A DNA stretch of 64,000 nucleotides from Klebsormidium nitens (Eukaryota > Plantae > Klebsormidiophyceae), in contig DF236973.1 in assembly GCA_000708835.1 (NCBI GenBank), positions 1-64,000 on the forward strand, in the 5' to 3' direction. A program made the position numbers and the translations under genes. Below are positions 39,344 through 63,042 of the stretch, one piece after another. The notes beneath the pieces were generated by a model. The model did not search any database. It was not told where the DNA came from and saw only the letters and a program-made list of their open reading frames with translations. Each line of letters opens with the position of its first letter. The stretch's first letter is position 1.

Positions 39344-39650
39344 AAAGTCGCCGTTTGCAAATTGTCGAGACGTTCTGCCGGTCTCACATGTCCGCGTCTC
39401 TTCAAGAGCTACTACTATATATGCAGCGCAGGATATAGTATATACTGCACTTCCCTGCAAGCTTCCGTGGTCTTAGCGTGATTGGCGTCCAACAATAATA
39501 CAAAGTCGCCTTTTGCAATTTTTCGAGACGTTGATATCTGCCGGTCTACATGTCCGTCTCTTCAAGAAGCTGCTATGTAGCGCAGGACTTATCCTATACT
39601 GAACTTTTCGAGCAAGCTTCCATGGTCGTGGCGTGCTTGGCGTCCAACAA
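39344..39650. repeat. Degenerate 158-bp tandem duplication between NRDE2 and the array
   Basis: AAAGTCGCC..TTGCAA..TCGAGACGTT..ACATGTCCG..CTCTTCAAGA..GCAAGCTTCC..TTGGCGTCCAACAA starts at 39344 and again at 39502. Confidence 0.85.
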
Positions 39651-40427
39651 GTGCTCGGATCCCGGAGTCCTCAGCACGCGGCCGCGCCCGCCCCAGCTAT
39701 GGATAATGGCCGCAATTTGATGACGAAATGATTGCGCCAGCTACCTTCCAGGTGGAGGCATAAGATTGGTTCAAAGTTGGGCGACTCGAGCTCAAAGATT
39801 CCAACTTCCGCCTTGCTTGTGGCCCGTGAAAGACGGGCATCACAGGTAGGCGGTAGACTCAGCCTGGGTGCGGCCGTTCCACTAGTTGGCCGGCAACTGG
39901 AAGACCGGAGATCTGTACCGAGCAACATTGGGCTGAGTCACTCTCTAATCATTGCTGGCCTTGACTCACGAGGGCCGAGTCACCCGCAGCATCATGAGCA
40001 TGCATGTGGGATCACCCAGCTTGCAAAGCAGCAAGGCGGCATTGAACCAGCCACATTGCGCGACCAGAGTTGTGAAAGACTACCGGTATAGGCAATTGAA
40101 GGTGCTTCATTGAAACCCTGAAGGGTGGCGCCGATTGGCTTGGATGACAATCAACAGCAGGGTTCTTTAAATGCTGGCTGAGTCGGCTTCGTTGCTCCTC
40201 ACCAACTCTTTTGAGCTCCACCCATAATCCGTTTGCAGTGCGTAGCAGCTGCGCCAGGGGCATTGACCGCTGCTCTGCATTCCACAAGGCAATCTTCACT
40301 TATTGGCTGCACGGCACCAGCGCGGATAAAGACGTCTGCTCTTGCAAAGCACAACGCTGCTCGTCGTTCTGTTCCGCAGTGTCAGGCAACTAGTGAAAAA
40401 TAGCGGGCGTTATTGCAGCGCTATGCA

Positions 40428-43400: not shown

Positions 43401-45984
43401 TTCGATCGGGTGCATTTACGCTGACGGGAACCATTATCTTTGCTGCACTGGAACCGCGAGCGGTACCGGGTTTTCCGAGTGCGGTCCCCTTGGTCCCGAC
43501 GGTGTACCCGTCTGCCCTGGCGAGACTTTCACGCCGACTCCCAACGATTACCCCCCGCCGGTTCCGGCGCCAACTCCTCAGCCCGAGGTTCCACTGCCAA
43601 CCGGTGATCAGGGTAAGCGCCACGTCAAGGGTGTTTGTATTGTGCCGACATTCAAGATTTTTGGGGCGTCTACTTCAACTGACTCACTGCTTCTTATTGA
43701 TGATCTGGAGAACGTGTTGTAATCTCCACGGACTTCCGAAGTGTTGTTTCAGTCTTTCTTGTCAGACTGTCAGCCGCTTCTGAACGGCATGTCTTCGAGC
43801 GAAACGGTGCCGCTCTCCGTACTCTGCTTCTGCTCTTGGCCGTCCGTAACCCTTTATTTACACCGTATATTCCGCTTGCATTTTGACACCTTAGAGCTTG
43901 ACCTGGAGAGCCTAGGACCTTAATGTCAATCAATGAGTTCTGCTTGGTTCATGCCCTGTGAAAGCATTGTCGTTCTGAAGTCGAGAACGGTCCTTTGTGC
44001 GTCATCTCGTGCTGTCCGCTTGATGCCGGGGCGATGAAAGAGAGGTCGACCCTTCCGCCCCTTCGAAGGAAATGCTCGCTCGAAGACGTCTGCTCTCATG
44101 AGCTTCTGATCTCTTCCTTTTCAGGGGTTTGCGGCAGCGGACCCGCGGCTGACTTCCCCTTTCGCTGCTGGTTCAACAACGACCCCCAGGGCCGCTACGT
44201 GTGCTGCGACGCGGGAGGCTGCAACGGCTTCAATCCTGGCCTCGGGACGCCGCGCTGCAGAGACAACGGCTACGTGCCGCCCAACAACGGAGTGGGCGGG
44301 CCGACCCCCCCGAGCACTCCCCCGAGCACTCCCCCCAGCACTCCCCCCAGCGGAGATCAGGGTACGTGAAAACCAGCGACCAGTCTCTTCCGGGTTGTGT
44401 TGGTCCCAGGTGCCGTTGATTGTGTCAGAATCGACTAATGCCCAGATCGCAATGAGGTAGCTTCTGAATGCGAGAAGCAGAGGTTGGTTATGATCCTGGA
44501 GTACGCCAGTCACGCGCAAGCAGGAAGTAGGCTTTCAAGCAGGTAGCAAATTAGTCGGACTAGCGCCCGGCCCTGCTAGATGTATTTTGGCACGGGCTCT
44601 GAGGCTGCCCAAAGGGCTCGTAGGCGTCCAGTCCTTCTGCAAAGTTTTGGCCTTTGATCACTTTGTTTCTGGTTTCTTTCCTCTCTGCTCCAGGGAGCAG
44701 AAGCGCCCTTGTGGCAGACTTTTTACGACGTGGACGCCACCCTCGCTCGGGTCAGCGGCGCCCTGTTCAAGAAAGCCTCATCTTGACTGATGCCAGTTCG
44801 TCGTTTTCCGTCAGGAGTTTGCGGGGGCGGGGCTGCGTCTGACTTCCCGACGCGCTGCTATTTCAACAACGACCCGCTTGGGCGTTACGTGTGCTGCGAC
44901 GGGCAGGGCTGCGACGGCTTCAACGCCGACAACCTGACGCCGCACTGCAAAAACTTCGGCTACGTGCCGCCCAACAACGGACTGAGCGGGCCGACCCCCC
45001 CGAGCACTCCCCCGAGCGGTCCCCCCAGCGGTCCTCCCAGCGGCTCTCAGGGTAAGCCACGTGTCCTGCACTTGGAGGTCCGGCCTCGGTCTGAGCGGTC
45101 CTGGTCTTCCGGTTACTTCCGGTAACTCGCCGAGCACATCTAGACACGGACCTAAGAGTCGATTGCTCACTTGAATACACTTTAGTCCCAATGAAAGCCG
45201 TGCCGGTTTTTTCAAGTGTTCTCAAAAGGGATCACGTACGAGCCCCATCTTACCAGAGACATTGGCGACCTTCGAGCACTGCCGCAAGCCCAGACTCGCA
45301 GCCCTAAGATCTGCATCCAAGCCTTCGTCTTTCATTAAAGTCAGGTTACTCTCTTTTCTTTGACTTTTTTGAGGATTGCGTTTTAAATCTGAACACACGA
45401 CCTGATCGAGGCAAGTCATCGGCTGCGTGGGCAGGCAAACGCTTGCTTTGCGGATTATTTCGACCCTCGGCTACTTGTGTCTAGAGGCCAGGCGTCGGAA
45501 ACGATTTCCTTTGAACCCCAGGAAAACGAAAGAGCGACCGTTTCAGCACTTTGAAATAGCAAACTTTGTGACGAGCGTCTTCCTTTCCCGTCTTAAACAA
45601 GTAGCCGGGAACGCTTTCTCGATAAAGAACGTGGCCGAGATCGTTCAGCGCAAGACTACAAAGTTCCGTTTGGTTCCGCGTGCTAGGCCACCGAGGTCGC
45701 TGCCTGCGAAATCGCATCCCTTACGAAGACCCGAACACGCAGTGCGCGCATCCATATTTGCATTACGCTCTTCGACTCACAGCTGCCTTGATTTCGTACC
45801 CTCTGCAGGCGTGTGCGGAACGGGTGGTGCCACAGACTTCCCGGTGCGCTGCTGGTTCAACAGCGACCCCCAGGGCCGCTACGTGTGCTGCGACAACGAC
45901 GGGTGCAACGGGTTCAACCCACCGGATTACTCGTTCCCCCGCTGCAAGACCAACGGTTATGTGCCCCCTGGGTTCGGAGTCTAG
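40428..45984 (+). CDS. Secreted EGF-like + tandem six-Cys (knottin-like) module protein, array copy 1 (476 aa, 9 exons)
   Basis: Exons 40428-40570, 40962-41008, 41446-41580, 41873-42032, 42630-42694, 43382-43612, 44125-44361, 44815-45051, 45809-45984 are all GT-AG and sum to 1431 nt in frame. Signal peptide MVAFNNNVAFVLLALLALYGAKPAQG. EGF-like domain CNPNPCQNGGVC..CNC..TGRTC. Four C-C-CC-C-C modules with PSTP linkers. The exon structure is replicated in two paralogs. Confidence 0.9.
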
Positions 45985-46871
45985 TCAACTGGTCAACGAC
46001 GTTCCTATCACACGCATCCTAAAGTTTTGCACCGTGTTCCGCTGGTTAGTGCGTGCAACTTCGAAACAGTAGCTATTTATTGTCGAGGGCCCCCTTACCA
46101 CTATTATATGGTTCGCTTTTGGTAGCCCGGCTGGTCCGACTTACGATATGTAGAGACCCTTATAAGTGCGGAATAGGTGGAGGTGTTCAACCAGAACAAC
46201 CAAGGCACACCCGGAATAAGGCCAGCTTATGAAACCTTAACGAGTCGTTTCTTGGCATAAAGGAATCTTTTACAAGTTCAAGTACCTAGATTGCTGTCTT
46301 TCAACAGATAGGCAAATGGACTCGTGATCCTTGATCCAACGTCGAATGCGAGAATCCGAGTTGTCGTAGTTATCAGTGTCCCATGTACCTAGAGTATTGA
46401 TGACGCAATCATCTGAAAGAGGGGTGTCCAGCTTAGAAGTCCATCATTTAACCCACCAACACTGACACAATACCCGGAGTCACATTAGACAGCTAACTTG
46501 GCAAGGTGCAGAATTCTTTAAAAGCCTCTTTGTCATATATCGCACTGTTGCTTAACGATCGTGTTGCTTGACACAACGCCATCATCACATGCAATCAAAA
46601 CAGAAGTCACTGCAATTTGCACTTCCTCATGCTCGTCAAGCAAAGATATCTAGGATTAGCACTTCTGATCACACGTCTAACACAGACAATGCATGGTGCT
46701 ACTTGTTTGCCCTTGCCTCGTCCCCAATGGGGACTCCTAGGTAACTTCCCGAAGTTGAGTTACATAAGTGTAATTTAGGTACTTCTTACATTTTAGATGA
46801 TGTGCTAGTTTCGGATTAGTCAATTGCCAGGGAGTTGCAACTCTTAAAACTCTTAAAGCAATGCGTAATTT

Positions 46872-47445
46872 GCCAAACCAACTCAATGTTAAAAAGCAAG
46901 TGCAACATGAGCATCTCACACGACCGGAAGCGGCGGCCGTGAAAACTTGACAATGGCCTCGCACTTTGATAGTGCTCTGTACTCGTGCGGCCCTTTTGAG
47001 GTTTAAAGCTCTGGAAGGGCTTGGAAGCTAGCACGCGGGTCTTCCTGGCTATGACTACAAAGCAGCAAAGGAATAATGGCGGCAGGTCTTGATAACGAAA
47101 TGGGGCCTCCCTTTTCGATTTGAACTTGAACCTTCAAGGTCAAAGCTCAACGACGTGCCACGTTGGCGGGTGGTAAAGGAATTAGCCAATAGTCTCTCGA
47201 ATAAAGGTTTAGCCTTACCGCGAAGCTGCAGTGACATACCGGTACCAATACAACAATACAACAACAACAATATACAAAGCATGGCGTTGGCCAAGCCAAC
47301 TCAATGTCAGAAAGTGAGTGCCATGCAGCACCTCAAATGTCAATAATACGACCAGAAGCGGCGGCTGTGAAGAGATCCCCACGGCCGACGAAACCTGACA
47401 ACGCCAATGGCCTCGCACCTAATGTGCTCTGAATTGCTCGTGCGG
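46872..47445. repeat. Degenerate ~120-150 bp direct repeat in the copy 1-copy 2 spacer
   Basis: GCCAA(A/G)CCAACTCAATGT..CGACC(G/A)GAAGCGGCGGC..CAATGGCCTCGCAC..CTCGTGCGGC at ~46872-46990 and ~47289-47445. Confidence 0.7.
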
Positions 47446-47762
47446 CTCTGTGATGGATAGCTCTGGCCTGGCTGCGCTGCAAGCTAGCTGACCGAGACGC
47501 GCTGCCTATAGTATCGCAGCAGCCGTGATGCCTCCTCGATCTCCAATCTGGCACAGGGAGGCACTGCATGATTGCGCCAACTACCTTCCAGGTGGAGGCA
47601 TTGGATTGGTTCAAAAAGCTCGACGACTCGAGCTGAAGATTCCGCCCAGTGAAAGACCGCATGACAGTAGGCGGTAGGCACAGCCGGGGGCTGCGGCCGC
47701 CCCAATTTGAGATACAACGAGAGACCGGAGATCTGTACCGAGCAATGGGCTAAGTCACTGAG

Positions 47763-48531
47763 GCAAAAGGGACAATCTACACTATTATATTAGTGTCTCC
47801 GGTCGATCTGTCAGAGTAAATACTCTCACAGGGCGTCAATCTGTGCAGGCATTGGCTAATGGTCTGACATGTGTCAGAGTGATCTGTTTGCTTGGATGCG
47901 GGAGTCCTCTTTGACCGGGCACCGGCATGGTACCGAGCTACTTCCCTTGGGACCTCTCAGTTTCCCGGTGACACGGCATACTGCACACTGCACAGTCACT
48001 GCCTTTTCACTCACAGTCACAGTCACAGTCACAGTCTAGGTACCTCTTAAAGTGTCCAGTGTCAAGACTCAAGACCCACAGCATGAGTTACAGTTGGTTT
48101 TCGGCAGGTAAAAAAGCGCCGCAGCTTACGGTCACAATTAAGGTTTAAGGTGTCTCAGTCTCAGTCACAGTTACAGTCTCAACCACAGTCACAGTCACGT
48201 CAATCATAAAACAAAGTTAACAGTCACAGTCACCCGATAACAGTCTCAACCACAGTCACAGTGTCAATCATAAAACAAAGTTAACAGTCACAGTCACCCT
48301 ATAACCCTATTAGGTAGCTTGAAAAGATTCAAACCTGATTGACACAGAAAGATGTGGCGGTCGTCTAGCTACCCGGCCAGCGATAGCAAGTGCCCAGATG
48401 ACCGCTGTGCAGGTGTGGTACCTACCGGCCAGCTTCATAGATTTGTTCATTTATGGTCGCGGCACGGGAGGGTGTTAACACCGAAGATTTTCCGGAGACA
48501 CTAATATTATAGTGTACTTTGTCCTACTTGC
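47763..48531. mobile_element. Non-autonomous Mutator-like (MULE) element, 769 bp, ~40-bp TIRs, 9-bp TSD
   Basis: TSD GTCACTGAG at 47754-47762 and 48532-48540. TIRs 47763-47802 and 48492-48531 match at 34/40. The interior has (CACAGT)n and a ~60-bp direct repeat (48173-48235, 48240-48299). The element is absent at the homologous site upstream of copy 1. Confidence 0.8.
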
Positions 48532-48989
48532 GTCACTGAGCCTCGAGGCCCAGGTGAATCATAGAGTCATAGGTAGAGTGACTAGAGTCACCCGCAGCAT
48601 CATGACTCCATGAGCATCATGGGGCATAAGAAACGGGATCACCTTGCAAAGTCGCAGGTGGCAGGCCGCAGCACTGTTGCGCCAGCAGTCTCAGTTGATA
48701 TGTATGAGCACTACAGTTGGAAAAAGGAAAGGCGCTCCACTAGAATCCTGGAGGGTAGCGCCAATTGGCTTGAATGATGTCAAATTGTCAATCCACAGAT
48801 AGTGTCCTTTGAGTAGCAGGTGCGCGCCAGGGTTGATCACTGCTGCATTCCACAAGACAGTCTTCACTCATTGGCTGCAAGGCTTAAGCACGTCTCCTCT
48901 TGCAAAGCACAGCATTGCACGTCCGTCTTTCTTTCCCACAGTATCAGGCACCTAGTGAATCATAGCTGAGGTCATTGCAGCAGACCGCA

Positions 48990-51900
48990 ATGGTGGCTTT
49001 CAACAACAACGTGGTCTTTGTGCTGCTGGCATTTATGCTCGTATTGCATGGGGCTCAGCTGGCGCAGGGGCAGGCTGCTGAGGTGTCACTGTCATGCCCC
49101 GTCGGATATCTGGTGCAAGCTGCCCGTAATGTCCCAACGTAAGTGCCATTTCTTGAGGCAAAGATATGTTGCTTGAAGATTAGAGCTGCAGGTCTCACTT
49201 CCACTTCTCCTCTACAGATCAATGTGCCGCACTCGATTCTGCAGACTTAAGTTGGCTCTAGTGGCAGAATTTTGATTGCCAGTTAATGCTCCAGGATTCC
49301 ACATGGGCATTGCCTAAGTACCTTTAAACAGTGCAACGACCATTGTTTTGGGCTACAGGCCACCCCCATGCCTCGGGTTCAAGCCACATTCACGACTGCC
49401 ATAGACTCATAAACTGCTAACCTCTGTAACCAATCTCCGCCCACACTCCAGAAAGCCAAACTCAATTAGAAAGAATCAGAGTTTTGAGGTTTGCGACGTC
49501 AATGCCGTGCACTGTGTGCAGGTCTTTGGCAAGCTACTGACTTTCATTTCTTGCTCTTTGAAGGTATTTTTGCACGACCGACCCCTGTTATGAGAACCCT
49601 TGTGGTCCTGATGAGTGCGCTCTGATGCTTCCACCTATTGGAAAATCAAGCAAGCATCCTTGTCGTCAAACCCGCAAACTGCCAACGAGGTCTAAGCTTA
49701 CTGTGAAGCTGGTGAAGATACTGCATGAATTGAACTTCTCAGAATGAATGCCCGTGACCAGCACTCAGCAGACCCTTAGACTGCTTTTATCCTGCCCTCA
49801 CAAGGCTGCTTTTATCTGAGCTGCAAGCACACTCCTTTCTGGCGTGGCTAGATGTGGGGGTAATCTGAAATGCCTTTCCTATCATCCTTGAGTACAGTCA
49901 TGCTTGCAAATGGTTTGCCTTCTTTGCTGCAAATGAACTCCCACCCACAATCAGTCTGGTTGGAACTCAGCATTCTACTCAACATCCTGCAACAAGCAAT
50001 GCCTGCTCTTGGTTTGCAGGTAACCCCTGCGACAACTTTCGATACAGTTTTGGAGTGACTTCCAACTGTACGGCGTGTAATCCTCCCTACAAGAGGGGCA
50101 CCTATATCATCGGTTTCCCGGACATAGTGCCCCTTGGGGTCTGCTACTTGCCCGGTAAGTTGCGGGACATCAGGTTCAAAGCTTCATAGCCCGCTAGGCT
50201 TGCAAAAAATTGCTCAAAAGGGCACCACAATTGTGCACATACGGAGGCTGAACTGACAGAATGGATGGATGGAGAACAGGGACTCCCGGCGGGCTCCCTA
50301 CTGGACCCCCTTCCAGCATAATCCTTCGATCGACGGTCAAGATTGATGGTTTTGATCAACCTCGACCGTTGATCAAAAGGGGTTATAGCTAGGAGGGGTA
50401 TCTAAATATCGGCTTGGGAGTCCATGTTCTCCCTCCTTCCGTTCTGACAGTAGTCCTTTTTCTGTCGACTCAAATATGGATCGGCCAATACCATAACGGA
50501 AATCTTACAGCCTTCCCCTAAGAGGTTCTTCAGGAAAGCCTTCAGTACCTTAAGGAAAGGGTCTTGGGTAGTAGGGCTGGGTCTCACTCAAACCCCAGAC
50601 CCTTGAACTGAAGAGGATTTTCATATACATTCACACTTGGGGTCGTTCTGCGCAGGCCAAGACGCATGCAACCCCAACCCTTGCCAGAATGGTGGCGTTT
50701 GCTCCTACAGAACGGACGGTTCAGGGCAGCCCGTGACTGACGAGCAAGGGACCAGGTTTCTTCTAGGGTTTTGCAACTGTAGCAGCACTGGCAAGACAGG
50801 GCGGTTCTGCGCCGACGAGTGAGCCCCCTTAACAGGCTTGTGTTTGCAAGCCTTTCAAGAGTTCAATTGACGAAGTGCGTTTCTATCATGCATCTTTCAG
50901 CTGAGCAAAGTCTGGACTAGCTAACCGTTCGAAGACCGACAACAGCGGTATCCGTTGTGCTGGCAAACAGAGGTGTTTCACCAGAATCGCTCGTTGACGA
51001 GCAATGGCACCTCAGATAGTTCAAGGGTTTTCTGAAGGCATCTTGCTTTCGTGGTCTATAAGCAGTCGACTTTTGCTGGCATCTGAGGCGTTGATATGCA
51101 GAGAGAAGAGGCATCAAACGGGCTGGTTTTAGATCCCAGTACCTCACAGCTGGTTGTGTACTGGACAAACCTTTAGTCGAGCTTGGACTAACCCTTTGCT
51201 CGAAACAACCGCATGCCCTCTCTCTCGGTTACAGAGGACTCGTACAGATTTCTTCCACTGCCGGCCACCTCGTAACCGCGTTGGGCAATCAATTGGCTGC
51301 ACGTTTAAAGTTCCTCAGCACAACACTCGTCTGATATTGTCCGGTTGGGCTTCCTTGGCCGTGAATCTTCCCTTCAAAAACATGTCTCCTCCTCCTCAGG
51401 AATGTGGAGGCTCCCATACCGACTGCCACCGTCAACGGCGTTTCCGGACCACTTGCGGTGGCAGCAAGTGAGGCGCTTTGAGAAGTTCAAACTGTTTACT
51501 TTCGTAGGACATGTAACTTTGGCTAGCAAAGGGTGGAGGCACCCACTCGTGGTTGCTAGCTCAACTTTGAAAGTGTTTTACGGTCAGTTCGTCCTAGTCA
51601 AAGAACAGCGTTTTCTTACCACGGGTTCAGACAACATAATTCTAGCACGTCTAATTTGCTGCCGCAACTCGTTCTGTTGCCTTCGCTTCTCGCGAGACGC
51701 TTGCTGGATCATTTGGCCCCCGAAGAGTGCCGCCTGAGTGCTTCAACAATCAAGCGGAACTGCAGGTTCCACAAAGAGACGGTATCAGCTCAGATCCGCT
51801 CTTTGGACATCAACGATATGGTCTTATGTCAGAGCGCACAAGGTACTTTTGTGCCCATGAAGGGCGAGCGAGAGAATCTCGCAGCTAACTCACCGGGTTT

Positions 51901-54813
51901 TAAAACCACTGGTCCAAATACGGGCTGATTAGATGCTGGTTTCAACATCGAAAGGCAGGTTCGAACGATAACCAGAGTCGTAACAAAGCTACAGCCCGGT
52001 TGTGTCCCCGTTAACCAGACACGTGGCTGGCTATTCAGCCTGGTTAGTCGCAAAACCCCTCGTAGCTGACCATCTGAAGCTTCGAAATTCCACTCCCTGC
52101 AGCCGGAGCCATGCTCTGCGGCCAAGCTTTTGCGATCGGCTGCCTTTACCCTGACGGGAAGCACTACACTTGCTGCACCGGTGCCGTGAAGGGTTTCGGG
52201 CTCTCCGAGTGCGGTCCTGTTGGTCCGGACGGAGTACCCATCTGCCCTAGGGAGGGTTTCACGCCGACCCCCAATGATTTTCCCCCGCAGACTCCGCCGC
52301 CGACTCCGCAGCCCGAGGTTCCACTGCCAACCGGCGATCAAGGTAAGCGCCACGTTGAGGGTATTATTGTTGCGCCGATCTCCAGCGGATCCAACGGATC
52401 TGGGAGTTTAGGCGTCGACCCTTGACTGTTTGACTGCTGTGATCTGGAAGACGTGTTCATGAGTACTCCGTAAATTGCACGAGCTTCCGAAGTGCGGTCG
52501 CTTATTGTCTTTTCTTGTTAGACGGTCAGCCGCTCCTCATTGTCATCCCTTCGAGCGAAACGGTGCCGCTCTACCTACAGCTCTTTTGCCCTTGGCCGTC
52601 CAATCCTTTACTCACACAACCTATACCGCTGGCATTTTGACATCTTAGCGCTTGACCAGGATGAGCCTAGAACCTTAATTTGAATCATTAAGTTCGGATC
52701 AGTTCACGTCCAGTGGAATTAGCGTTTCTGTGCTAAACTCATCGCTTGTGCGTCATCTTGTGTTGTCCGCTCCATTCCTGATCCTACGAATCCGACGAAA
52801 GGGAGGTCATCTCTCCGCCCTTCTGGTAGAGCCCAACTAACGCTGGCTCGAAGACGTCCGCTCTCCATGAGTTTCGGATCTCTTAATTTTCAGGGGTTTG
52901 CGGCAGCGGACCCGCGTCTGACTTTCCCTTCCGCTGCTGGTTCAACAACGACCCCCAGGGCCGATACGTTTGCTGCGATCGGGAGGGCTGCAACGGCTTC
53001 AATCCTGGCCTCGGGACGCCGCGCTGCAGAAACAACGGCTACGTGCCGCCCAACAACGGAGTGAGCGGGCCAACCCCCCCAAGCACTCCCCCGAGCAGTC
53101 CCCCCAGCGGAGATCAGGGTGCGTTGATCCTACCGACCCAGTCTCTTCCGGGTTTAGTCTCGCCTGACTGCCCTTGACTCTATTCGTGCACGCTTGACTG
53201 TTTCCAAAGCTAAAGAGGGACATCTACTGTCTTAGCTCTTGCAACGAGCTAGCTCGTGAATGTTGCGAGCCTTACGTTGGTGATAAATTTGAGATGCTTC
53301 AGTATTGTGTCACGGAAGGTGGTTGATTTTCGAGCCTTGTCGAGCGGGTGGCAAGATTTCGAGTATCGTTCTGCCCTGCGAGACGTACTTTCGCACAACT
53401 CTCTTGTCTTCACAGAGGGCTTGCAGACGTCCCATTTTTCTACAAGGTTTCTGGTCTTCAATCGATCCTTCTCTGGTCGACTCCCTTCTGCTCAAGGGCA
53501 GCCGAAGGCTGTTTGGGAAACTTCTTCACGTTAACGCCTCTCTCGCTCGAGATCAGCACCCTCTTCGAAACAACTCACTTCAACTCATACCAATCCTTCC
53601 CCTCCGTCAGGCGTTTGCGGCGGCGGGGCCGCGTCTGACTTCCCGACGCGCTGTTATTTCAACAACGACCCGCTTGGGCGTTACGTGTGCTGCGACGGGC
53701 AGGGTTGCGACGGCTTCAACGCCGACAATCTCACTCCGCACTGCAGAAACAACGGCTATGTGCCGCCCAACAACGGGCTGAGCGGGCCAACTCCCCCGAG
53801 CGGCTCTCAGGGTAAGCCACGTGTCCCGCATTTGGAAACTCCGATAGCAGTGTGAGCGGTCCTGGTCCTTTCGGCTACTTCCCGAGCACGAGTCAGACGA
53901 CCCGGGCTCAACCGTTGGTTTCTCGTTGAAAATACTGATCTCCGGTGAAAGCAGTGGCGGTCCGTCGGGTGATCTCGGGCAATTATTCACGGTATAAAGC
54001 GCCCCTTTTTAATAGGGACCTAGTAGTTCTCGAGCATCCTGCCAAGCCTTCGTCATTCGTTAGGGTCAGGTTGACTTTTTGAGGATGGCATTTCAGAATT
54101 GGACATACGACGGCGGAGAAATACGTCATCATTTGCATGGGCAAACGCTTGCTTCGCGGGATCCTTCGATCGTCGGCCGCTTCTTGCCCTTGGAGACCAG
54201 GCGTCGAGACCAATCTCCGTAAAAACACCACGGACGAAGAAGCTACCGTGTCAGCATTTCAAAAGAGCAGAGCTTGTGACGACCGTCCTCGCCTCCCTGG
54301 CCAAGCCTTTGTTGAGAAGTGCCTGCAGAAACAGATTTCTCCATTTCCAAGGAGCTTCAAGGAGCTTCAACGTTTCAACTGCCAGTCCTCGTTACCTTGG
54401 TCGAGCGCCGTTTCTGACTCTCTTCCCTCCTTGAAGACGCTTTTTCCGAAGAAGAACGTGGTCGAGATCATCCAACGCAACAGTACGAAACCGTCCAATT
54501 CCAGCGTCGCAGCGTGCTAGGCCGCCGAAGTCCCTGCATGCAACAACTATCCAATTACAAGACCCGAACACGCAGTGTGTGCATCCACTTTCAAACAATT
54601 TCCAATTCACAACTGCTTGTTTTCGTATCCTTTGCAGGCGTATGTGGAACGGGTAGTGCCACAGATTTTCCGGTGCGCTGCTGGTTCAACAGCGACCCCC
54701 AGGGCCGCTACGTGTGCTGCGACAACGACAGGTGCAACGGGTTCAATCCGCCTGATTTCTCGTTCCCCCGCTGCAAGACCAACGGCTATGTGCCTCCTGG
54801 CTTCGGGATCTAG
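48990..54813 (+). CDS. Secreted EGF-like + six-Cys module protein, array copy 2 (467 aa if normally spliced; exon-2 donor mutated, possibly pseudogenising)
   Basis: Exons 48990-49138, 49564-49610, 50020-50154, 50656-50818, 51400-51467, 52103-52342, 52894-53118, 53611-53811, 54638-54813 sum to 1404 nt in frame with no internal stops. The intron after exon 2 begins ATGAGT (49611), whereas copies 1 and 3 have GTGAGT. Confidence 0.8.
50257..50446. mobile_element. Fold-back MITE (~190 bp) in intron 3 of array copy 2
   Basis: The ends CAGAATGGATGGATGGAGAACAGGGACTCCC and the reverse complement of GGGAGTCCATGTTCTCCCTCCTTCCGTTCTG match at 27/31. Internal arms are also inverted. CTGACAG is duplicated at 50253-50259 and 50444-50450, and the homologous copy 1 site has a single TTGACAG and no insert. 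Exact TSD length is ambiguous. Confidence 0.7.
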
Positions 54814-55921
54814 TGGATGACGGTCTAATCACACGCCATCAAAGTTTTGTACCGTGTTTCGCTGGTTAAAAGTGCGTGCAAATGAGGAATAGCAGCTATT
54901 TAACGTTGAGGCTCCCTAACCAGAACTAGACGGTTCGTTTTTGGCAGCACGGTCCGAGTAAAGCATTGGCATAGTAAGAGACTAGGTGCGTCGCGGCTTC
55001 AAGCAGAACAATCAGAGCACCCCCCGAGTTAAACGGACCAAGTTATTGAAATCTTATTTATGTGTACTGTCGCTTGGCGTTAGGAAATGTTCGACAGAAT
55101 GATTGTAGTTGCAGGCCTTTGAAGCGGAACACCTAGATATGCATGAACTGTTAGTCCTTGAAAGGAGGGTGAGGAAGACGGGGTTGTAATAAATCCTTAC
55201 GCGAGTCTTGTCGGACGCAATTTTTAGATTACCGGTGTCCAACTTAGCTTAATCGCCAAACCCACCAACACGTGCAGACAATTCGCAGAGTCACATTAGG
55301 CAGTCGCAGCTAGATAGCCTGGCAACGTGCAATTTTTCCGACATCGATTTCATGGCGGCATGCCAACTAATTAACGCCGTTTCAAAGAAGTTGCGTTGCA
55401 CTCTATTAGTAACGACCATCATTGAATGCATTTTGTTGAACACATTATTGGATGCACACTTTTGCTATGGACTGAGTGACAATAGTATTCCTTTAAAACA
55501 AACGCGATGGTGCTATGTGCCCTTGCCTGAGTCCTGTGTGGAACTCAAAACAGGTGAATCTTTGTGTAAGTACGCGGTTACTTCGTCAGGCTTACTTCAG
55601 ATGTGCAGTTATAATCAGGTGGCCACTTTTGCCAGGAACTTTCAAGACGATTGACATCTGATAAATGCCATCTCATAAATGCTTCGACGGGGCACTGCTT
55701 TGAACCACTTTAGGTATGAATACCTGGGGTGAGCTCAGTGTAGCCTGTCAGCCTGTAGCCTGTCACCAACGCCAGCTTCCAGCTAGGTAGATCGTAATTG
55801 GGGTTGGTTGTCACGGGGTTGTCACGAGTCCGGTCTCGCCGCTGCACTGCTGTGACGGTGGCGGCCACAGTGCGGTGTGGACTCTGGAGTCAGCGAAAAT
55901 TGCGGAGATGGGAGAGCGGAC

Positions 55922-56193
55922 CAGTGATTGCCACCAACTTTGGCCGGCGCCGGCAATCTACCGGCCACCCTTCGTTCCTGCCGGCTGAGTGTAAGTTTCT
56001 ACCGGCTTCCCCCAAGTCCCCGGATCCATTTAGCCGGGTATCTGGACAGTCTCTCAGCTAATCTCAGCCGGTACCCGGTCAAACACGCCGGTTTTTCAGC
56101 CGGAGCCCAGCCGGCTGAGTGCCTTCGGCACCGGTTAGACCCTCGCTCCAGCCGGCTAGGTCCACACACAACACCGGTTCGTGGCAATCACTG
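55922..56193. mobile_element. hAT-like MITE, 272 bp, 13-bp perfect TIR, 8-bp TSD
   Basis: TIR CAGTGATTGCCAC at 55922-55934 and its reverse complement GTGGCAATCACTG at 56181-56193. TSD GAGCGGAC at 55914-55921 and 56194-56201. The interior is dense in CCGG motifs. An 8-bp TSD with a CAG terminus is typical of hAT elements. Confidence 0.85.
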
Positions 56194-56402
56194 GAGCGGA
56201 CTGGATCCAGGCCCCGGGGGAGCTACCGCCCTCCTGAATGGAGTGACAAAACGGTGGGCGGTACCCCGTACCGAGCATTCTCAGGTTAAGTCTGGGTTGA
56301 GTCACCCTCTAATCATTATGGCCGAGCCCATGTGGCCACGCACACGTACGAGTCACTCGACCGAGGGCCGAGTCACGTCATCGGGATCACCTTGCTAGTA
56401 CC

Positions 56403-56790
56403 GTACTGATATAAATAAAGTTTAATACCTATAAGGCATTGTGACCTATAAGGTACTGTATTGTGTAAGAGGACTGTACTTTTAATGATTGCGCGGTCGT
56501 ACCCCGCGCTGCGCGGTGCGTACCCGCGAAGCAGCCGGGCCTACCCTGGGACATTAGGGTCTCGCAAGCAACCGGGTGACAAGAAGGCCCTCCCTCTGAC
56601 ATTAGGGTCTCGCAAGCAGCCGGGTGACAACCGGGCACTTCCCAGTAACATTAGGGTCTGTCGGTCACATTACCCTAGGTTTTTAGTGTTTGCCCGGGGC
56701 CTCACATGCACAGTATTCCTCTACGGTTGAAAACGAATTCCTTATAGGGAATGTACCTTATATGTATTAAACTTTATGGTTATCGGTACT
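56403..56790. mobile_element. Probable fold-back/MITE-like insertion (~390 bp) upstream of array copy 3
   Basis: Imperfect ~50-bp inverted arms: 56403-56453 GTACTGATATAAATAAAGTTTAATACCTATAAGG versus the reverse complement of 56740-56790. There are internal tandem copies of ACATTAGGGTCTCGCAAGCA(A/G)CCGGGTGACAA. No clear TSD was found. Confidence 0.55.
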
Positions 56791-57197
56791 GAGCACTCAT
56801 GAGCACATCGCGATAAAGTTGGTGGCAAGCACTGGCAATTAGCAGTCTCGCCTGTACCGGTATTGTACACTTCTTTCCTCAACAGTCAAGGCTCGTGCAG
56901 TGCTGATTGAAAATCTATCTCAATGATGAAGGTTGAGACACCGTCTAGCTGGCATTGTATGAGTTGTTCTGCGGCAAGGACGCTGCTGAACCGGCCCTGG
57001 GCTTCAGTGTCTCATCAAGCGCTGGTTGGTCCTTTGAAAAGCACGCACTGAAGGACCTTATACGCCATTGGCATTGCATATCACACACCACCGGCAGAGC
57101 GGGCTGGGACGTCAGTCCTCTTGCAGCAGAAAACGCAGCTTTCCTCGTCTTTCCTTCCCGCATCTGGAAATATTGTGCAGTGGCGCAGCTGTGCGCA

Positions 57198-60100
57198 ATG
57201 GCGGCTTTCCGTAACAATGTGGTGTTTATGCTGCTGGCATTGCTCGCACTGCAGTCTGGGACGCAGCCTGCGCAGGGGCAACCTTCCGGTGTGACAAAGT
57301 CATGCCCTCCCGGATATCTGGTGCAGAGCAATCGTGGGGGACCCGGGTAAGCACTTTTGACGCAGGCGAAATTATGATTGGGAGCTGAACTCACCGGCAT
57401 TTCTCCCCTGCAAAGCTGGCAACTCTTGTATGGATAGAGGTCAGGTTTCAGTCATCCCGCAGTGACTAGATTGACATGGAATGTCTGTCTGGGCAGTGCG
57501 CTGACTTTGACGGAGGAACCAGATTGAGCTGACATGTGCCTCATAGCTCACCTTCGAGAAACATGTGCATACTTTCTCAGACTATCTTGGATTAAACTCT
57601 GACGCTTGCCAGAGACTCAAGGGTCTACTGCACCACCGCAAGGAGCTTGGTTTAGATGGTGCCATAAAGCATTCTTATCCGGGTCCTGATTTATAATGAG
57701 CTTTGTCCTTGACAGGTCCTTCTGTACTCCTGATCCTTGTGTTGGGAACCCTTGTGGTCCTGGTGAGTATGTTTAATGTTCCTTTCTTGCCTTAGAACCG
57801 TCAGCAAGTTTACTTTACCATCCAGCCATTCTCACCGCAGCATCCTCAATGAGTCATGAATAAGCTTTCAAGCTGGTGGCAACTCAAAAGAAGACCTCAC
57901 AACAGGAGTGTTTATGGTCAGGGCTGTACAATTGTCGATTGTTCAGACTTTTAGCAGCTTTTAGTTTTGCAAACAGCTGCTTGAGTTTAGCAACATACAA
58001 GCATTTTCATTTGCTTCCTTTCTCTATCTGGCAAATATTTGTGGGTGGACTGATGAGACCTTGTCACAACATATACATGCAGTCAATGTTGAAAGTTCTT
58101 GTCTCCCAGTTCAGATAGACTCCCTCCATTCCAAACTATATGATTGAAGAGAAGAAGCACCCTTCACTTGACCTTCTTAGAAATGACCTTAATGTGTTTG
58201 CCTGCTCTTGTCTGCAGGTAACACATGCAGTATCCAGGGGTCATTTAATGGACCAGTTCCTGATTGTGGTTGCAACCCTCCGTACAAGAGCGGCGTTATT
58301 CCAGGTCAATTCAACTACAGAGTCTGCTACATCCCTGGTAAGTGAAGGGCCGCCAAAGGGCACTGATTTGACTCGTTCCTGAGAAGCGCCAAAGTTGCTG
58401 TTTAGTGGATACAAGGGTTCAAATGATTGGGGCTAGGAAACTCCTCTAAAAGCGCTTACTTGAGGAGTTGTTGCAAAGGCGGCCTGGTCTTTTCACTGGA
58501 CTGCGAAGGAAGAATTTGATCTTGATTGGTTGAGATATGACCCTGCGGCATGGTTAATCAACCTACATTGTGCTCCAATGAAAAAGCCAGGTCTTTCTGC
58601 CTTGCATTTCAGTATCATGATGCTCTTTTCGTGGATTCAATCTATTTGCTTTTTCTGCTCAAAGATCTTCATCGAGTGCCGTAAACCTCAATTCGAATGT
58701 CCTCACTAAATCTCAAGAATACTACAATGGTCTCAAAGTATCTGTTTTAAGGTAAGTTATCCCTTTCTTGGAACTTGCAAAAGCTGGACAACGTTACCGA
58801 GACTTAGGTGTTGTTCAACCAAGTATCACATAAATGGCTGGTTAAACCACTCATTGTCAATCCTGCTGAGATAGTGATGACTACCGTTTTGCCAATTGGG
58901 GCGTCGCTCCTGTTTGCGAATCGTGCTGCTTCACGACTGGTCTTCACCCAAGACTGATACGGAAGCCTATTACCAGCACTTCTCTAAGTCTCCCTGGTTA
59001 ACCCGACCAAGGTTAACCATGCTCATTACTGGTCGTTCCTTGCATGTCCAAGTAACACCTGTGCTGTTCATGTCTGCGCAGGCCAAGACGCTTGCAATCC
59101 CAACCCGTGCCAGAACGGGGGCACATGCATCTACAGGCAGGGCCCTCTGGGTGAACCCCTGACAGACGACCAAGGAACTAGATACGCTGCCCGATGCGAT
59201 TGCGGCCCCACTGGGTTTACGGGACCGACCTGCAGCGACCCGTGAGTCAATCTTTCATAAGCAAGGTTGACAATGTGCAGGGTTCTCTCACGTGATCCGG
59301 GTTCATTAGACTCGGCCTTGCATGCGTCGGGCTTGGAAATATCAAGGCTTGTGTATTTATCTGAAATTCTGGTCAGATGAATGCAAAAGCGTCGCTGATG
59401 ACCTCCAGCAGAGAACTTTGTCGTGCTGACGACCCGAGCCTAGGCTAGAAGCGCTCATGCGAAGCGCACTGCCAGCTCGAGTACTGGGGATCGGTTGAAA
59501 CGCTAGCGTCACAGGAAGCTCTCGATGCTTCTAGAGTTTTGTCATCTGTGCAAGTCAAACCCTGTGTAAGGATTTCAAAGCGACGAAGGGGAGCCGTCAG
59601 AAGGGACTGAATTTGAGTCCAAAACGGTGCTTTTTCGAAGTTCTGCATGGTATCCAATCAGACAATCAGTGGAACATCGGCACACCCTTTCGCTCGATAT
59701 TGTGTATGGATTTCTGTTCCTCCTTTCTTGGTCACGGACTCTTTTAACCACTTCGTCGTTCAGGCCCGCTACCACTTGCGATGCACTGGCCGAATGACTT
59801 GGTATCTTCTCATCGCCCTTACCAAGAACTTCTGTCAGGCTCTCTGCGTACCAAGAGTGTTATGCCAAACGCTGTTTCTCCCTGTCTGCAGGTTCCGGGA
59901 AAGCCCCCCTGTGATTGCTACTGTAAACGGCGTGTCGGGCCCACTTGCGAGGGCATTGCTGGGTGAGGCGCTCTAACTCATCCAACAACGAGGATAAACA
60001 AATGCTCGCTTTCAAACCGAAGCTGTCACCGAAGCTGTCAGGAAACACACTCACTGCTTCTGACACTTCTTACCCTGAGGAGGTTGCTTGAAAGTGACCC

Positions 60101-63042
60101 GAGTCCTTTGCTTTGTCACATCCGAAACGATTGGAGGAGTCTACGTCCTCAAAGGACTTCAAACATACGCGCTCTCATGCGCCCGAATCGATTGGTTCTG
60201 CGCTCTGATTGATTGCGATGGCTTCCGATGCGAGTGCCGGTCGCCTGTTTGCATCGGCACCCTCGAGCTCACTTTCTGACTTTGTCAAGCATCGGCCAAG
60301 GCTCGGTTGCACTTGTTGAGAAGGAGTCTAAGACATCTTGTCGAGAGGAAAGCCCCGAAGAGTTGGGGCGCGCTTGGATATGCTGGTGCCCACAACCATG
60401 GTTTCTCCATTGTCCTGTAGTGAATCGTCGATACCAGAAACGGCATCATTCGGAATCCTGACACGAGGCAAAGGGCGCTTACTGAGCATTGTCGGTTGAG
60501 AGCAAGCCAGGACGTTTTGCAGCTGACCCTTCGCCTCGTTGCCATGCAGAATTCATCTGCGGCTCGAATAGCCTCCCGCCGATTCCCTGCCTTTACGCGA
60601 GCGGGAAGCAGTTCATCTGCTGTGCCGGATCCGAGTGCGGTCCCATTGGCCCAGACGGAAACACCCCCATCTGCCCCGGCGAGGGGTTCACCCCGTCCCC
60701 CAATAACTACCCGGCGCCAACTTCGCCGACTCCTCAGCCCCCTCCACCGGGCAGTCAGGGTAAGCGCGCTGTTGAGTAATTGTACCAAGCTAGACTGTCA
60801 GGACGTTAGGGGGCGTTATCGTCGATCTGATTCACTGTTTCTGTTGCAAAACTTAGAAGACGCGTCTTGGGGCATTTGTGGGACCTGCACAAGCGTTCAG
60901 ATTGTTGTCGTTACTTCTCAGCTTGTCAGCCGTGTTTTCCTTGGACAAAACGGTTCCGGTTCCGTCGACGTCCTTTGATCTTGCTCTTGGCCGTCCGCAG
61001 CCCTCCGCTCACGCGATGGAGTCGGCTCGCTCTATTGCTCTACCTTGGGGCGTGACCATGACCCGAAAAGCCTGCTTCTGCCCTAATCTGGTCCGTTGTT
61101 CTTGATCGCAGACCTGCGAGGAAGGCTTGTTACAGTTCATTTGTATCAAAAGAACGTTCGTTTGTTCCCGTTTGCTGTCCGCTTGATGCCGACGCGAGGG
61201 GAAGGAGGTCGTTCCTTTCTGACGACCGTATCATAAACGCACGCCATCCTTCGAACTTTCCTCTTCGCTTCGTCGCATGATACTTCAACGCCCTTCATCA
61301 CACATATTCATTTCCGTCAGGAGTCTGCGGAACCGGGGACGCCTCGCCGTTTCCCAACCGCTGCTATTTCAACAACGACCCCCAGGGACGGTACGTGTGC
61401 TGCGACAACCAGGGCTGCGACGGTTTCAACGCCGATAATCTGACGCCGCACTGTAAGAACAACGGCTACGTGCCGCCAAACAACGGGCTCAGCGGGCCGA
61501 CTCCCCCGAGCACCCCCCCGAGCACTCCTCCGACCGGAGACCAGGGTACGTGGAAATCACCGACCAGTGTTTTCTCTGATGCGATCTGTTGCACGTATTT
61601 GTGCAAGCTTGTCTGGTAAAGAAAGCTGGAGTGAAGCGCTGCACCTCTGTTCCGCGTGCGCAATGAAAAGCTTGCAAATGCTGCGGGCGGAAAGGTAATG
61701 AGAATTTCGAAGCGCATTGTCTGCCCCGAAAGGACTTGGAAGTTCGAGCCTCGTCAAGCCGATATGGCTAGCATTCTGCCCCGCTCATGTAAGGCGTGCG
61801 TCTGCAGCAGGCAGTCCTTCCGCAAGGCTCCAGGAAACTGTTACCCTTTCGCTTGGGGATCAAGGAGGACTCGTTTACATTGATGGTTGTTCCAATCGAT
61901 CCAATCTTTACGTTCTTCACAACCGCCCGGTTTGACACATGCCAATTCTTCCCATCTGTCAGGCGTCTGCGGAAGCGGCGCAGCCGGCGCTTTCCCCACG
62001 CGCTGCTATTTCAACAACGACCCTCAGGGCCGCTACGTGTGCTGCGACGGGCAGGGCTGCGACGGCTTCAACGCCGACAACCTGACGCCGCACTGCAAAA
62101 ACTTCGGCTACGTGCCGCCCAACAACGGACTTAGCGGGCCGCCCCCCCCGAGCACTCCCCCGAGCGGTCCCCCGAGCGGCTCTCAAGGTAAGCCACGATT
62201 CTTGCTTGGACAAAACTTGCATATCATCTGAGCACGACTCTCAGGCGGAACGCACAGGGACCTCGAAATGAGTGACGCTAGCCCTCCGGTCGACTTTTCG
62301 GGCGACGTTCCGAGCCGCTCTTGACGTGAGAAGGGCGCGAGCGCTCTCCCGAGCACGTGGCAGCTCGGAGGCTGAACAAGGCGGCGTGACGCACTCCTTA
62401 ATAGGAATGGGTTCAGCTCGTTCCTGGCGTTTCGTGCAGCGGCTCCATCTATCGGTGATTGACTGCTAATGTAGGAAAAGGTTGTCAAAGAGCTTGCAGA
62501 GTGTCGGATCCTTGACCTTTTGACAGTTTGGAAATTCGCGATTGAATGCATCATGACAGCGATCAAATCTCAGAAGAGAGTAAGTTGCCGATTATGGCAT
62601 ACTTGGGCGAGCATCTGTCTAGTCAGCACGACCATCAGACCAGTTTTTCTCGACGTGCATTGCCCAAACACTCATGGCGCAAGCTCAGGGTCGAAGTGCG
62701 TAAAAGGTGAACGGCTCAAAAGCACATCAAATCCTAAAGCCCCGGAGCAAATGTGGGCTCCGGGGGCCCACATTTGTTGCTCCATGAATCGAGTCGGCTG
62801 ATACCATACTTGGAAGTCAAGAGCGTGGGTCCCTTGAGCCCCAATCCCATGTATCTTACGGTGCAGGCGTCTGCGGCACGGGTGGTGCCACCGACTTCCC
62901 GGTGCGCTGCTGGTTCAACAGCGACCCCCAGGGGCGTTACGTGTGCTGCGACAACGACGGATGCAACGGGTTCAACCCACCTGACTTCTCGTTCCCTCGC
63001 TGCAAGACCAACGGATATGTGCCCCCTGGGTTCGGTGTCTAG
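57198..63042 (+). CDS. Secreted EGF-like + six-Cys module protein, array copy 3 (469 aa, 9 exons)
   Basis: Exons 57198-57346, 57716-57762, 58218-58337, 59082-59241, 59892-59962, 60523-60759, 61321-61545, 61963-62187, 62867-63042 are all GT-AG and sum to 1410 nt in frame. Signal peptide MAAFRNNVVFMLLALLALQSGTQPAQG. Same phases and Cys pattern as copy 1. Confidence 0.9.

What the first reader, a model, noticed from the sequence alone, without database searches (positions are those of the whole stretch)
44125..63042. Novel ~45-aa six-cysteine module repeated nine times, each on its own phase-1 exon
Seen in sequence: the pattern C-x11-C-x11-CC-x4-C-x11/12-C with consensus GVCG.G.A..FP.RC(W/Y)FN(N/S)DP(Q/L)GRYVCCD..GC(N/D)GFN......P.C..NGYVPP occurs in exons 7, 8 and 9 of all three genes. 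Exon 6 is a diverged relative (C-x6-C-x9-CC-x11-C-x10-C in copy 1). All these exons begin in phase 1, which allows exon shuffling. Established knowledge: the C-C-CC-C-C order is that of inhibitor-cystine-knot and hevein-like folds, and conserved surface aromatics typify carbohydrate-binding modules. Inference: this is an undescribed knottin-like lectin or binding domain whose loops are longer than those of hevein or CBM1.
Basis: partly seen in the sequence, partly recalled or inferred. Interest (0 to 1): 0.8.

Follow-up and report, generated by a model that had tools for sequence, protein, structure and literature searches.

The report
Klebsormidium-only six-cysteine module on secreted proteins
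Three neighbouring, strongly transcribed genes of the land-dwelling green alga Klebsormidium nitens each end in three copies of a small disulfide-rich module that matches no described protein family or solved fold. The genus attaches this module, exon by exon, to the tails of several unrelated secreted proteins, most likely as a binding or anchoring unit.

Summary
Nine modules with the spacing C-x11-C-x11-CC-x4-C-x11/12-C lie on the + strand, three in each of three tandem nine-exon genes (CDS 40428-45984, 48990-54813, 57198-63042). Genes 2 and 3 are KFL_000240060 and KFL_000240070 of Klebsormidium nitens.

- **Exons.** Each module has its own exon, entered in phase 1 (cag|GG GTx TGC). The two inner module exons also leave in phase 1. 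For gene 1, spliced transcript contigs from four studies confirm every junction.
- **Selection.** dN/dS between same-position modules is 0.02-0.22.
- **Known families.** No Pfam family matches any of 40 module copies, and no PDB sequence matches. A confident AlphaFold model (pLDDT 87.6) finds no solved fold.
- **Distribution.** A profile search of 1.84 billion proteins gave 28 hits. All real ones are from K. nitens, K. subtile, or unnamed metagenome and transcript contigs.
- **Position.** The module sits at the extreme C-terminus, in 1-4 copies behind Pro/Ser/Thr linkers, on proteins with EGF-like, LDL-receptor-A or other heads.
- **Relatives.** Exon 6 encodes a diverged relative (hhalign 92%).

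The knottin or lectin reading is neither shown nor refuted, because disulfide pairing could not be read. My best reading is an extracellular binding or anchoring module, which is an inference. The scan has noted such Klebsormidium modules before on other DNA (s1-313246, s1-290849).

The parts
40428..45984 (+). Gene 1 coding region. Nine exons: 40428-40570, 40962-41008, 41446-41580, 41873-42032, 42630-42694, 43382-43612, 44125-44361, 44815-45051, 45809-45984. 476 codons. Intron phases 2,1,1,2,1,1,1,1.
   Evidence: GT..AG joints in transcript contigs of runs X1, X5, X6, X12. Frames and phases checked exon by exon.
43382..43612 (+). Gene 1 exon 6: diverged six-Cys module (C-x6-C-x9-CC-x11-C-x10-C) plus Pro-rich linker. 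231 nt, phase 1-1.
   Evidence: hhalign to the 45-aa module: probability 92%, E 5.8e-7.
44125..44361 (+). Gene 1 exon 7: module 1 plus (S/T)PP linker. 237 nt, phase 1-1.
44815..45051 (+). Gene 1 exon 8: module 2 plus linker. 237 nt, phase 1-1.
45809..45984 (+). Gene 1 exon 9 (coding part): module 3 with the x12 last loop, then the stop codon. The protein ends directly after the module.
48990..54813 (+). Gene 2 coding region = KFL_000240060 (GAQ79076.1, P0005, 447 aa).
   Evidence: The deposited protein maps exactly on the window. Identity of the record.
52103..52342 (+). Gene 2 exon 6: diverged module plus linker. 240 nt, phase 1-1.
52894..53118 (+). Gene 2 exon 7: module 1 plus linker. 225 nt.
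53611..53811 (+). Gene 2 exon 8: module 2 plus short linker. 201 nt.
54638..54813 (+). Gene 2 exon 9: module 3 and stop codon.
57198..63042 (+). Gene 3 coding region = KFL_000240070 (GAQ79077.1, P0033, 460 aa).
60550..60759 (+). Gene 3 exon 6: diverged module with a short CC-x4-C loop, plus linker. 210 nt, phase 1-1.
61321..61545 (+). Gene 3 exon 7: module 1. By sequence it belongs to the 'module 2' clade, so it is an exon duplication or conversion.
   Evidence: Tree (SH-aLRT 95).
61963..62187 (+). Gene 3 exon 8: module 2 plus linker.
62867..63042 (+). Gene 3 exon 9: module 3 and stop codon.

Best explanation
The three genes are tandem paralogues encoding secreted, multi-domain extracellular glycoproteins of Klebsormidium nitens. 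Each has a signal peptide, an N-terminal Cys-rich region, one EGF-like domain, a diverged six-Cys module, and three 45-55-residue six-Cys modules that end the protein. (S/T)PP-rich linkers separate the modules. The module is a genus-restricted, disulfide-stabilised small domain, mainly four short beta-strands in the model. It was spread by duplication and shuffling of symmetric phase 1-1 exons. Shown here: the module is real, spliced, highly transcribed, under purifying selection, C-terminal, and present on unrelated secreted proteins. Inferred: it works as a ligand-binding or anchoring unit. The repeated copies on stiff, probably Hyp-O-glycosylated linkers would bind a cell-wall or matrix polymer, most likely a polysaccharide, multivalently. 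That would tether or cross-link the N-terminal domains in the wall, as carbohydrate-binding modules do.
For: - Pattern, exon boundaries and phases.
- Spliced transcripts from four studies.
- Purifying selection, dN/dS 0.02-0.22 between same-position modules.
- Hydrophobic N-terminus with an A-x-G/A cleavage-type motif, and no hydrophobic C-tail.
- Only 28 hits in 1.84e9 proteins. All genuine ones are Klebsormidium or unnamed environmental contigs.
- At least 15 annotated K. nitens genes, plus K. subtile transcripts.
- Heads differ between carriers: Cys-rich plus EGF-like, LDL-receptor-A (27.9 bits, above cut-off), weak DUF7933, and unassigned.
- Module arrays end the protein, with 0-1 residues following, in nearly all full-length models.
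- Invariant or near-invariant aromatic and polar residues (F10, Y24, F35, R13, N17, D19, R23, D28, and an aromatic, usually Tyr, at position 50 of the G-Y-V-P-P motif) across 40 copies.
- Confident model, with all five models at pLDDT 77-88.
Against: - No binding assay, localisation or ligand is known.
- No structural or sequence similarity to any known carbohydrate-binding module.
- None of the type-A carriers I found is a recognisable enzyme, so the analogy with CBM tags on enzymes is indirect.
- One carrier (P0015) has the module at the N-terminus.
Confidence: 0.5

Rival explanations
1. The module is a protein-protein interaction or self-assembly unit. It would build or cross-link an extracellular glycoprotein network, or mediate cell-cell or filament-substrate adhesion, as EGF-type modules do in animal matrix proteins. 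It would not bind carbohydrate.
For: The module co-occurs with EGF-like and LDL-receptor-A domains, which are typical protein-binding modules. It forms tandem arrays on extended linkers. It sits on phase 1-1 exons, as in animal matrix proteins.
Against: No partner is known. The strictly C-terminal position and variable copy number (1-4) on different heads look more like a generic tag than a specific partner interface.
Confidence: 0.2
2. The modules are defence molecules: knottin-like antimicrobial peptides or multi-headed protease inhibitors, displayed on or released from a precursor.
For: The Cys order is C-C-CC-C-C. The shortest exon-6 variants (C-x7-C-x9-CC-x3/4-C-x11-C) approach the spacing I recall for plant knottin-type peptides. 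That recollection was not tested.
Against: - There are no dibasic or other processing sites at module borders.
- All loops are highly conserved with low dN/dS, unlike the fast-evolving reactive loops of inhibitors and toxins.
- No knottin or inhibitor appears among the fold matches.
- The modules are tails of large multi-domain proteins.
Confidence: 0.1
3. It is a very diverged member of an existing family (hevein/CBM18, CBM1, CBM14, X8/CBM43, PAC/Ole e 1, granulin) that the profile and fold searches missed.
For: Small disulfide-rich domains are hard to detect by sequence and by fold comparison. The tools themselves warn that a missing match does not prove a new fold.
Against: None of 40 copies gives any such Pfam hit, even at E<=10. 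The PDB profile search is empty at E<=10. Cys number and spacing differ from those families as I recall them. A published survey found no hevein homologues in Klebsormidiophyceae (PMC6362431).
Confidence: 0.07

Closest known systems
Other six-Cys modules of Klebsormidium: the exon-6 type in these same genes, and the ~40-residue C-terminal type in KFL_000010510, KFL_000210210 and others. Also noted by this scan as s1-290849 and s1-313246.
   Same: Same C-C-CC-C-C order, a Pro two residues before the last Cys, an aromatic after it, an extracellular C-terminal position and the same linkers. hhalign gives 92% (45-aa vs exon-6 type) and 80% (exon-6 type vs C-terminal type).
   Different: Loop lengths differ: x11/x11/x4/x11-12 here, against x6-7/x9/x3-11/x10-11 and x10/x9/x5/x10. 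Direct comparison of the 45-aa and C-terminal types is weak (21%). The link therefore runs through the exon-6 type and rests on small alignments.
Hevein domain / CBM18 (Pfam PF00187)
   Same: A small disulfide-rich extracellular module with a CC doublet and conserved aromatics, often tandem and fused to other secreted domains. It is a plausible functional analogue.
   Different: Hevein has eight Cys and much shorter loops (from memory). No Pfam hit and no fold hit. Reported absent from Klebsormidiophyceae (PMC6362431).
Inhibitor cystine knot (knottin) peptides
   Same: Six Cys in the order C-C-CC-C-C.
   Different: Loops 1 and 2, at 11 residues each, exceed the usual knottin range. The module is part of large proteins and is not a free peptide. 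No knottin appears among the structural matches. The knot topology could not be tested.
Chimeric hydroxyproline-rich glycoproteins of green algae and plants (for example volvocine pherophorins, or PAC-domain proteins, PMC7177597)
   Same: Secreted proteins in which globular Cys-containing domains alternate with (S/T)P-rich stretches, which are expected to be hydroxylated and O-glycosylated. They belong to the wall or matrix.
   Different: The globular domain here is unrelated by sequence: there is no Pollen_Ole_e_1 or pherophorin Pfam hit. Glycosylation of the linkers is inferred, not shown.
Animal extracellular-matrix modules spread by phase 1-1 exon shuffling (EGF, LDL-receptor class A)
   Same: One module per symmetric phase-1 exon, tandem duplication, and recombination with EGF-like and LDLa domains.
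   Different: A different lineage (streptophyte alga) and a different, unnamed module. Some carriers have the module sharing an exon with neighbouring sequence, or split by an intron in the deposited models.

Membership tests
Hevein / chitin-binding type 1 (CBM18, PF00187) | Match to the family profile | tested here: not met
   No Pfam family at E<=10 for the window ORFs, nor for 40 module copies scanned singly.
Hevein / chitin-binding type 1 (CBM18, PF00187) | Eight Cys in about 40 residues with short loops (definition recalled from memory) | tested here: not met
   Six Cys with spacing x11, x11, 0, x4, x11-12.
Hevein / chitin-binding type 1 (CBM18, PF00187) | Hevein fold | tested here: not met
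   No hevein chain among the Foldseek or VIA-align results for two models. Small domains score poorly, so this is weak evidence.
Inhibitor cystine knot (knottin) | Disulfides C1-C4, C2-C5, C3-C6, with the third threading the ring | not testable with these tools
   Structure prediction returns no coordinates, so pairing could not be read.
Inhibitor cystine knot (knottin) | Structural similarity to solved knottins | tested here: not met
   No match with Z>=2 among 48,161 representative chains. The Foldseek best E is 3.3 and that match is not a knottin.
Klebsormidium six-Cys module superfamily (unnamed) | Six Cys in register with the exon-6 and C-terminal module types, in profile-profile comparison | tested here: met
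   A2 vs A3: probability 92%, E 5.8e-7, all six Cys aligned. A3 vs A4: 80%. The direct A2 vs A4 comparison gives only 21%.
Carbohydrate-binding module (functional class) | Demonstrated binding to a carbohydrate | not testable with these tools
   Needs expression and binding assays.
Hydroxyproline-rich chimeric wall glycoprotein | Signal peptide plus (S/T)P-rich stretches | tested here: met
   Hydrophobic N-termini and TPPS/GPPS repeats of 10-25 residues follow modules 1 and 2. Hydroxylation and glycosylation were not tested.

The most novel reading that the evidence does not exclude
The module is the founding member of a new fold class of carbohydrate-binding modules, a new CBM family. It would be specific to Klebsormidium and would tether diverse secreted proteins to a wall polymer of this desiccation-tolerant terrestrial alga, for example callose. 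It would have been assembled by animal-style phase 1-1 exon shuffling together with EGF and LDLa domains.
Probability: 0.3. Interest if true: 0.65.

Novelty: new variant of a known kind. Interest (0 to 1): 0.5.

Why it matters
Klebsormidium is a key model for how green algae moved onto land, and its wall and extracellular matrix proteins are almost unstudied. This is a highly expressed family of at least 15 genes, deposited only as 'hypothetical' or 'EGF-like domain-containing' proteins. Its dominant domain has no Pfam entry and no solved or predicted structural neighbour. If it is a wall-binding tag, it would define a new carbohydrate-binding family and give a handle for localising and purifying algal wall proteins. 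It is also a clean case outside animals of domain spread by symmetric phase-1 exons combined with EGF-like and LDL-receptor-A modules. If it is only a structural spacer, it remains a lineage-specific curiosity.

Tried and rejected
- **Bacterial hit P0028.** This 4233-aa Pyrinomonadaceae LamG-like protein (E 6.6e-5) is spurious. Its five matched stretches hold a single Cys each and cover only profile positions 6-35.
- **ESM Atlas.** The feature search gave no usable hit. The Atlas fold search gave only TM<=0.43 to unrelated proteins.
- **Word search with the C-terminal ~40-residue module.** P0018 residues 338-390 found only itself. This is a sensitivity limit, not evidence of absence.
- **First word search with one module exon.** It found only four ORF fragments, because of the length window.
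- **FAS1 guess for KFL_002360050.** I suspected a fasciclin domain in its N-terminus. Pfam does not support this, so I dropped it.
- **Odd joint 45031->45807.** This joint carries six extra letters in two runs. I read it as a 12-nt length difference in the repeated linker, either a strain variant or an assembly collapse, and not as alternative splicing. I did not follow it up.
- **Literature.** No paper in the library names these genes. Searches on Klebsormidium with cysteine-rich, EGF-like or HRGP terms gave nothing on this module.
- **Complex prediction.** Not used, because no specific protein pair is claimed to bind.
- **Gene 1 protein.** The joined gene 1 protein was not assembled or searched, and its exons were handled one by one by reference. 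For genes 2 and 3 I used the deposited proteins returned by the search tools (P0005, P0033).
Full report
**1. What is in the sequence**

A six-frame pattern scan of the whole window finds exactly nine copies of C-x11-C-x11-CC-x4-C-x11/12-C. All are on the + strand, in three groups of three. A self-comparison shows three tandem paralogous units at about 40.2-46.1, 48.8-54.9 and 57.2-63.05 kb. They are 72-93% identical in the exons and much less alike elsewhere.

Every module exon opens with an acceptor cag followed by GG GTx TGC, so a Gly codon is split after its first base. The first two module exons of each gene close with CAG G|gt. They are therefore symmetric phase 1-1 exons of 201-237 nt. 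The third module exon runs into the stop codon right after the motif G-Y-V-P-P-G-F-G-(V/I). The finding's start (44125) is the first base of gene 1 exon 7. Its end (63042) is the last base of the gene 3 stop codon.

**2. Organism and gene models**

The profile search returned a 447-aa protein (P0005) that maps letter for letter onto gene 2. It is GAQ79076.1, hypothetical protein KFL_000240060 of Klebsormidium nitens, which UniProt names 'EGF-like domain-containing protein'. Gene 3 is GAQ79077.1, KFL_000240070 (P0033). Earlier notes of this scan had already named the alga, and this check confirms it.

**3. Transcription and splicing**

I laid contigs of four runs from four different studies on 40300-46100.

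- They cover the predicted exons at word depth 100-800 and the introns at about 5.
- They carry eight GT..AG joints.
- Together these define nine exons of gene 1: 40428-40570, 40962-41008, 41446-41580, 41873-42032, 42630-42694, 43382-43612, 44125-44361, 44815-45051 and 45809 onward.
- Checked exon by exon, the frames are open, the coding length is 476 codons and the intron phases are 2,1,1,2,1,1,1,1.

The runs are labelled 'RNA?' only as a guess. Exon-only coverage with canonical joints shows that they are spliced transcripts.

**4. Selection**

Nei-Gojobori dN/dS between modules at the same position in different paralogues is 0.02-0.08 for module 3, 0.08-0.11 for module 2, and 0.22 for module 1 of genes 1 and 2. 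Synonymous divergence in these comparisons is 0.18-0.85. The modules are therefore conserved coding sequence.

In a tree of 40 modules, copies group by position rather than by gene. The exception is gene 3 module 1, which falls inside the module 2 clade (SH-aLRT 95). This points to an exon duplication or conversion within that gene.

**5. Is it a known family?**

- Pfam gives nothing at E<=10 for the window ORFs, for ten full-length carriers, or for 40 module copies scanned singly.
- A profile search of all PDB sequences is empty at E<=10.
- AlphaFold2 on a 14-sequence alignment gave pLDDT 82.6, with two of five models agreeing.
- On a 40-sequence alignment it gave pLDDT 87.6, with all five models between 77 and 88. 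The model has a short helix and four short strands, and the strands contain Cys2, Cys3-4, Cys5 and Cys6.
- Neither model has a neighbour in the PDB. Foldseek's best E-values are 9.3 and 3.3. VIA-align found no chain with Z>=2 among 48,161 representatives. The ESM Atlas gave TM<=0.43.

The tools warn that small domains score poorly. I therefore read this as 'no support for knottin, hevein or CBM', not as proof of a new fold. Coordinates are not released, so the disulfide pairing that would decide the knottin question could not be read.

A published survey of plant lectin families found no hevein homologues in Klebsormidiophyceae (PMC6362431).

**6. Distribution**

A profile of 14 modules searched against 1.84 billion representative proteins gave 28 hits at E<=0.001. 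Of the ten I looked up by cluster, seven are K. nitens proteins, two are unnamed JGI-metagenome or Logan contigs, and one is a bacterial LamG-like protein. The rest of the 28 I did not trace to an organism. The bacterial hit is spurious, because its matched stretches each contain one Cys.

A second, word-based search with the three-module tail listed 14 annotated K. nitens genes, including both annotated genes of this window. It also listed three Trinity transcripts of Klebsormidium subtile. With KFL_000240050-type gene 1 not retrieved, K. nitens has at least 15 annotated carriers. A 103-kb metagenome contig (L001) carries an orthologous three-module array with the same phase-1 acceptors.

**7. 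Architecture of the carriers**

- In nearly all full-length models the module array ends the protein, with 0-1 residues following.
- Copy number is 1 to 4.
- Linkers are (S/T)PP or GPP repeats ending in G-(D/S)-Q-G.
- Heads differ between carriers:
  - a Cys-rich region plus an EGF-like domain, as in the window genes and many paralogues;
  - LDL-receptor class A repeats in KFL_000010510 (27.9 bits, above the Pfam cut-off);
  - a weak DUF7933 match in KFL_000210210;
  - an unassigned domain plus EGF-like in KFL_002360050;
  - other Cys-rich repeats in KFL_008230020, where the module is N-terminal.
- In genomic loci of these unrelated carriers the module again starts at a phase-1 acceptor splitting a Gly codon (L004, L007). 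Some deposited models place an intron inside the module or merge it with neighbouring sequence.

**8. Relatives within the genus**

Exon 6 of the window genes encodes a six-Cys module with shorter first loops. hhalign aligns it to the 45-aa module with all six Cys in register (probability 92%, E 5.8e-7). A third, roughly 40-residue type closes KFL_000010510, KFL_000210210 and several environmental proteins. It aligns to the exon-6 type at 80%, but only at 21% to the 45-aa type directly. I read these three as one superfamily, with the caveat that the alignments are small and Cys-rich.

Earlier notes of this scan describe such modules on other DNA of the same genome: s1-313246 (a ~45-aa module on three unrelated secreted domains), s1-290849 (a 36-residue module, three per protein), s1-324373 and s1-267583. 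I could not compare sequences with those notes.

**9. How it most likely works**

Shown:
- It is secretory-type. It has an N-terminal hydrophobic leader, and no transmembrane or GPI-type tail.
- It is abundant as spliced mRNA.
- It is conserved.
- It is modular.
- It is C-terminal.
- It is recombined with different extracellular heads.

Inferred: the module is a binding or anchoring unit. A small, rigid, disulfide-locked domain with invariant aromatics and polar residues (F10, Y24, F35, R13, N17, D19, R23, D28, and an aromatic, usually Tyr, at position 50) behaves like a carbohydrate-binding or wall-anchoring tag when it is repeated on extended linkers at the end of otherwise unrelated secreted proteins.

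By established knowledge of plant and algal hydroxyproline-rich glycoproteins, the (S/T)PP linkers are expected to be hydroxylated and O-glycosylated, which would make stiff spacers. I put about 0.5 on this reading. A protein-protein or self-assembly role gets about 0.2, a defence role (antimicrobial or inhibitor) about 0.1, and a missed known family under 0.1.

**10. Novelty and score**

The genes are deposited but uncharacterised, and no paper in the library mentions them. The module is an undescribed family, apparently restricted to Klebsormidium. Its kind, however, is familiar: a disulfide-rich, shuffled extracellular module on chimeric wall glycoproteins. I rate it a new variant of a known kind, with interest 0.5. 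It is real and cleanly documented, and the combination of phase 1-1 exon shuffling with EGF-like and LDLa domains in a streptophyte alga is noteworthy. Against that, its function is untested, and the scan has already met the module family elsewhere in this genome.

Noticed in passing
window 49565-49609 (gene 2), compared with 40962-41008 (gene 1) and 57723-57761 (gene 3): The deposited model of KFL_000240060 (GAQ79076.1) skips a conserved 47-nt exon 2 (peptide ...CTTDPCYENPCGP). This exon is spliced into gene 1 transcripts and is present in the deposited gene 3 protein. The model keeps frame by using shifted splice sites, so it is probably mis-annotated.
   Followed up: partly
window 40428-45984: Gene 1 is fully supported by transcript contigs, but neither protein search retrieved it among annotated K. 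nitens proteins. It may be unannotated or modelled differently in the deposited annotation.
   Followed up: no
window 45031-45051 / 45807: Contigs of two runs (X5, X6) join 45031 to 45807 with six extra letters. This fits a 12-nt shorter copy of the repeated SGPP linker, either a strain variant or an assembly collapse, and not a second splice form.
   Followed up: no
window 41873-42032, 50658-50819, 59084-59239: Each gene has one EGF-like exon (C-N-P-N-P-C-Q-N-G-G-x-C...). It scores below the Pfam gathering threshold (17.5 bits against 21.5). EGF-like and LDL-receptor-A modules are unusual in the green lineage.
   Followed up: partly
window 61321-61545: Gene 3 exon 7 is closer to the exon 8 type of all three genes (83-85% DNA identity) than to exon 7 of genes 1 and 2. 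This indicates exon-level duplication or gene conversion after the gene triplication.
   Followed up: partly
window 39338-39650, 34795-35268, 9333-9631, 48156-48305: Short local tandem duplications (72-89% identity) appear in the self-comparison, along with a TG/GT-type simple repeat near 48000.
   Followed up: no
L004 (K. nitens DF236950.1) 5942-6319: In KFL_000010510 the 45-aa module and the ~40-residue C-terminal module share one terminal exon behind LDL-receptor-A repeats. The two module types therefore travel together in some genes.
   Followed up: partly
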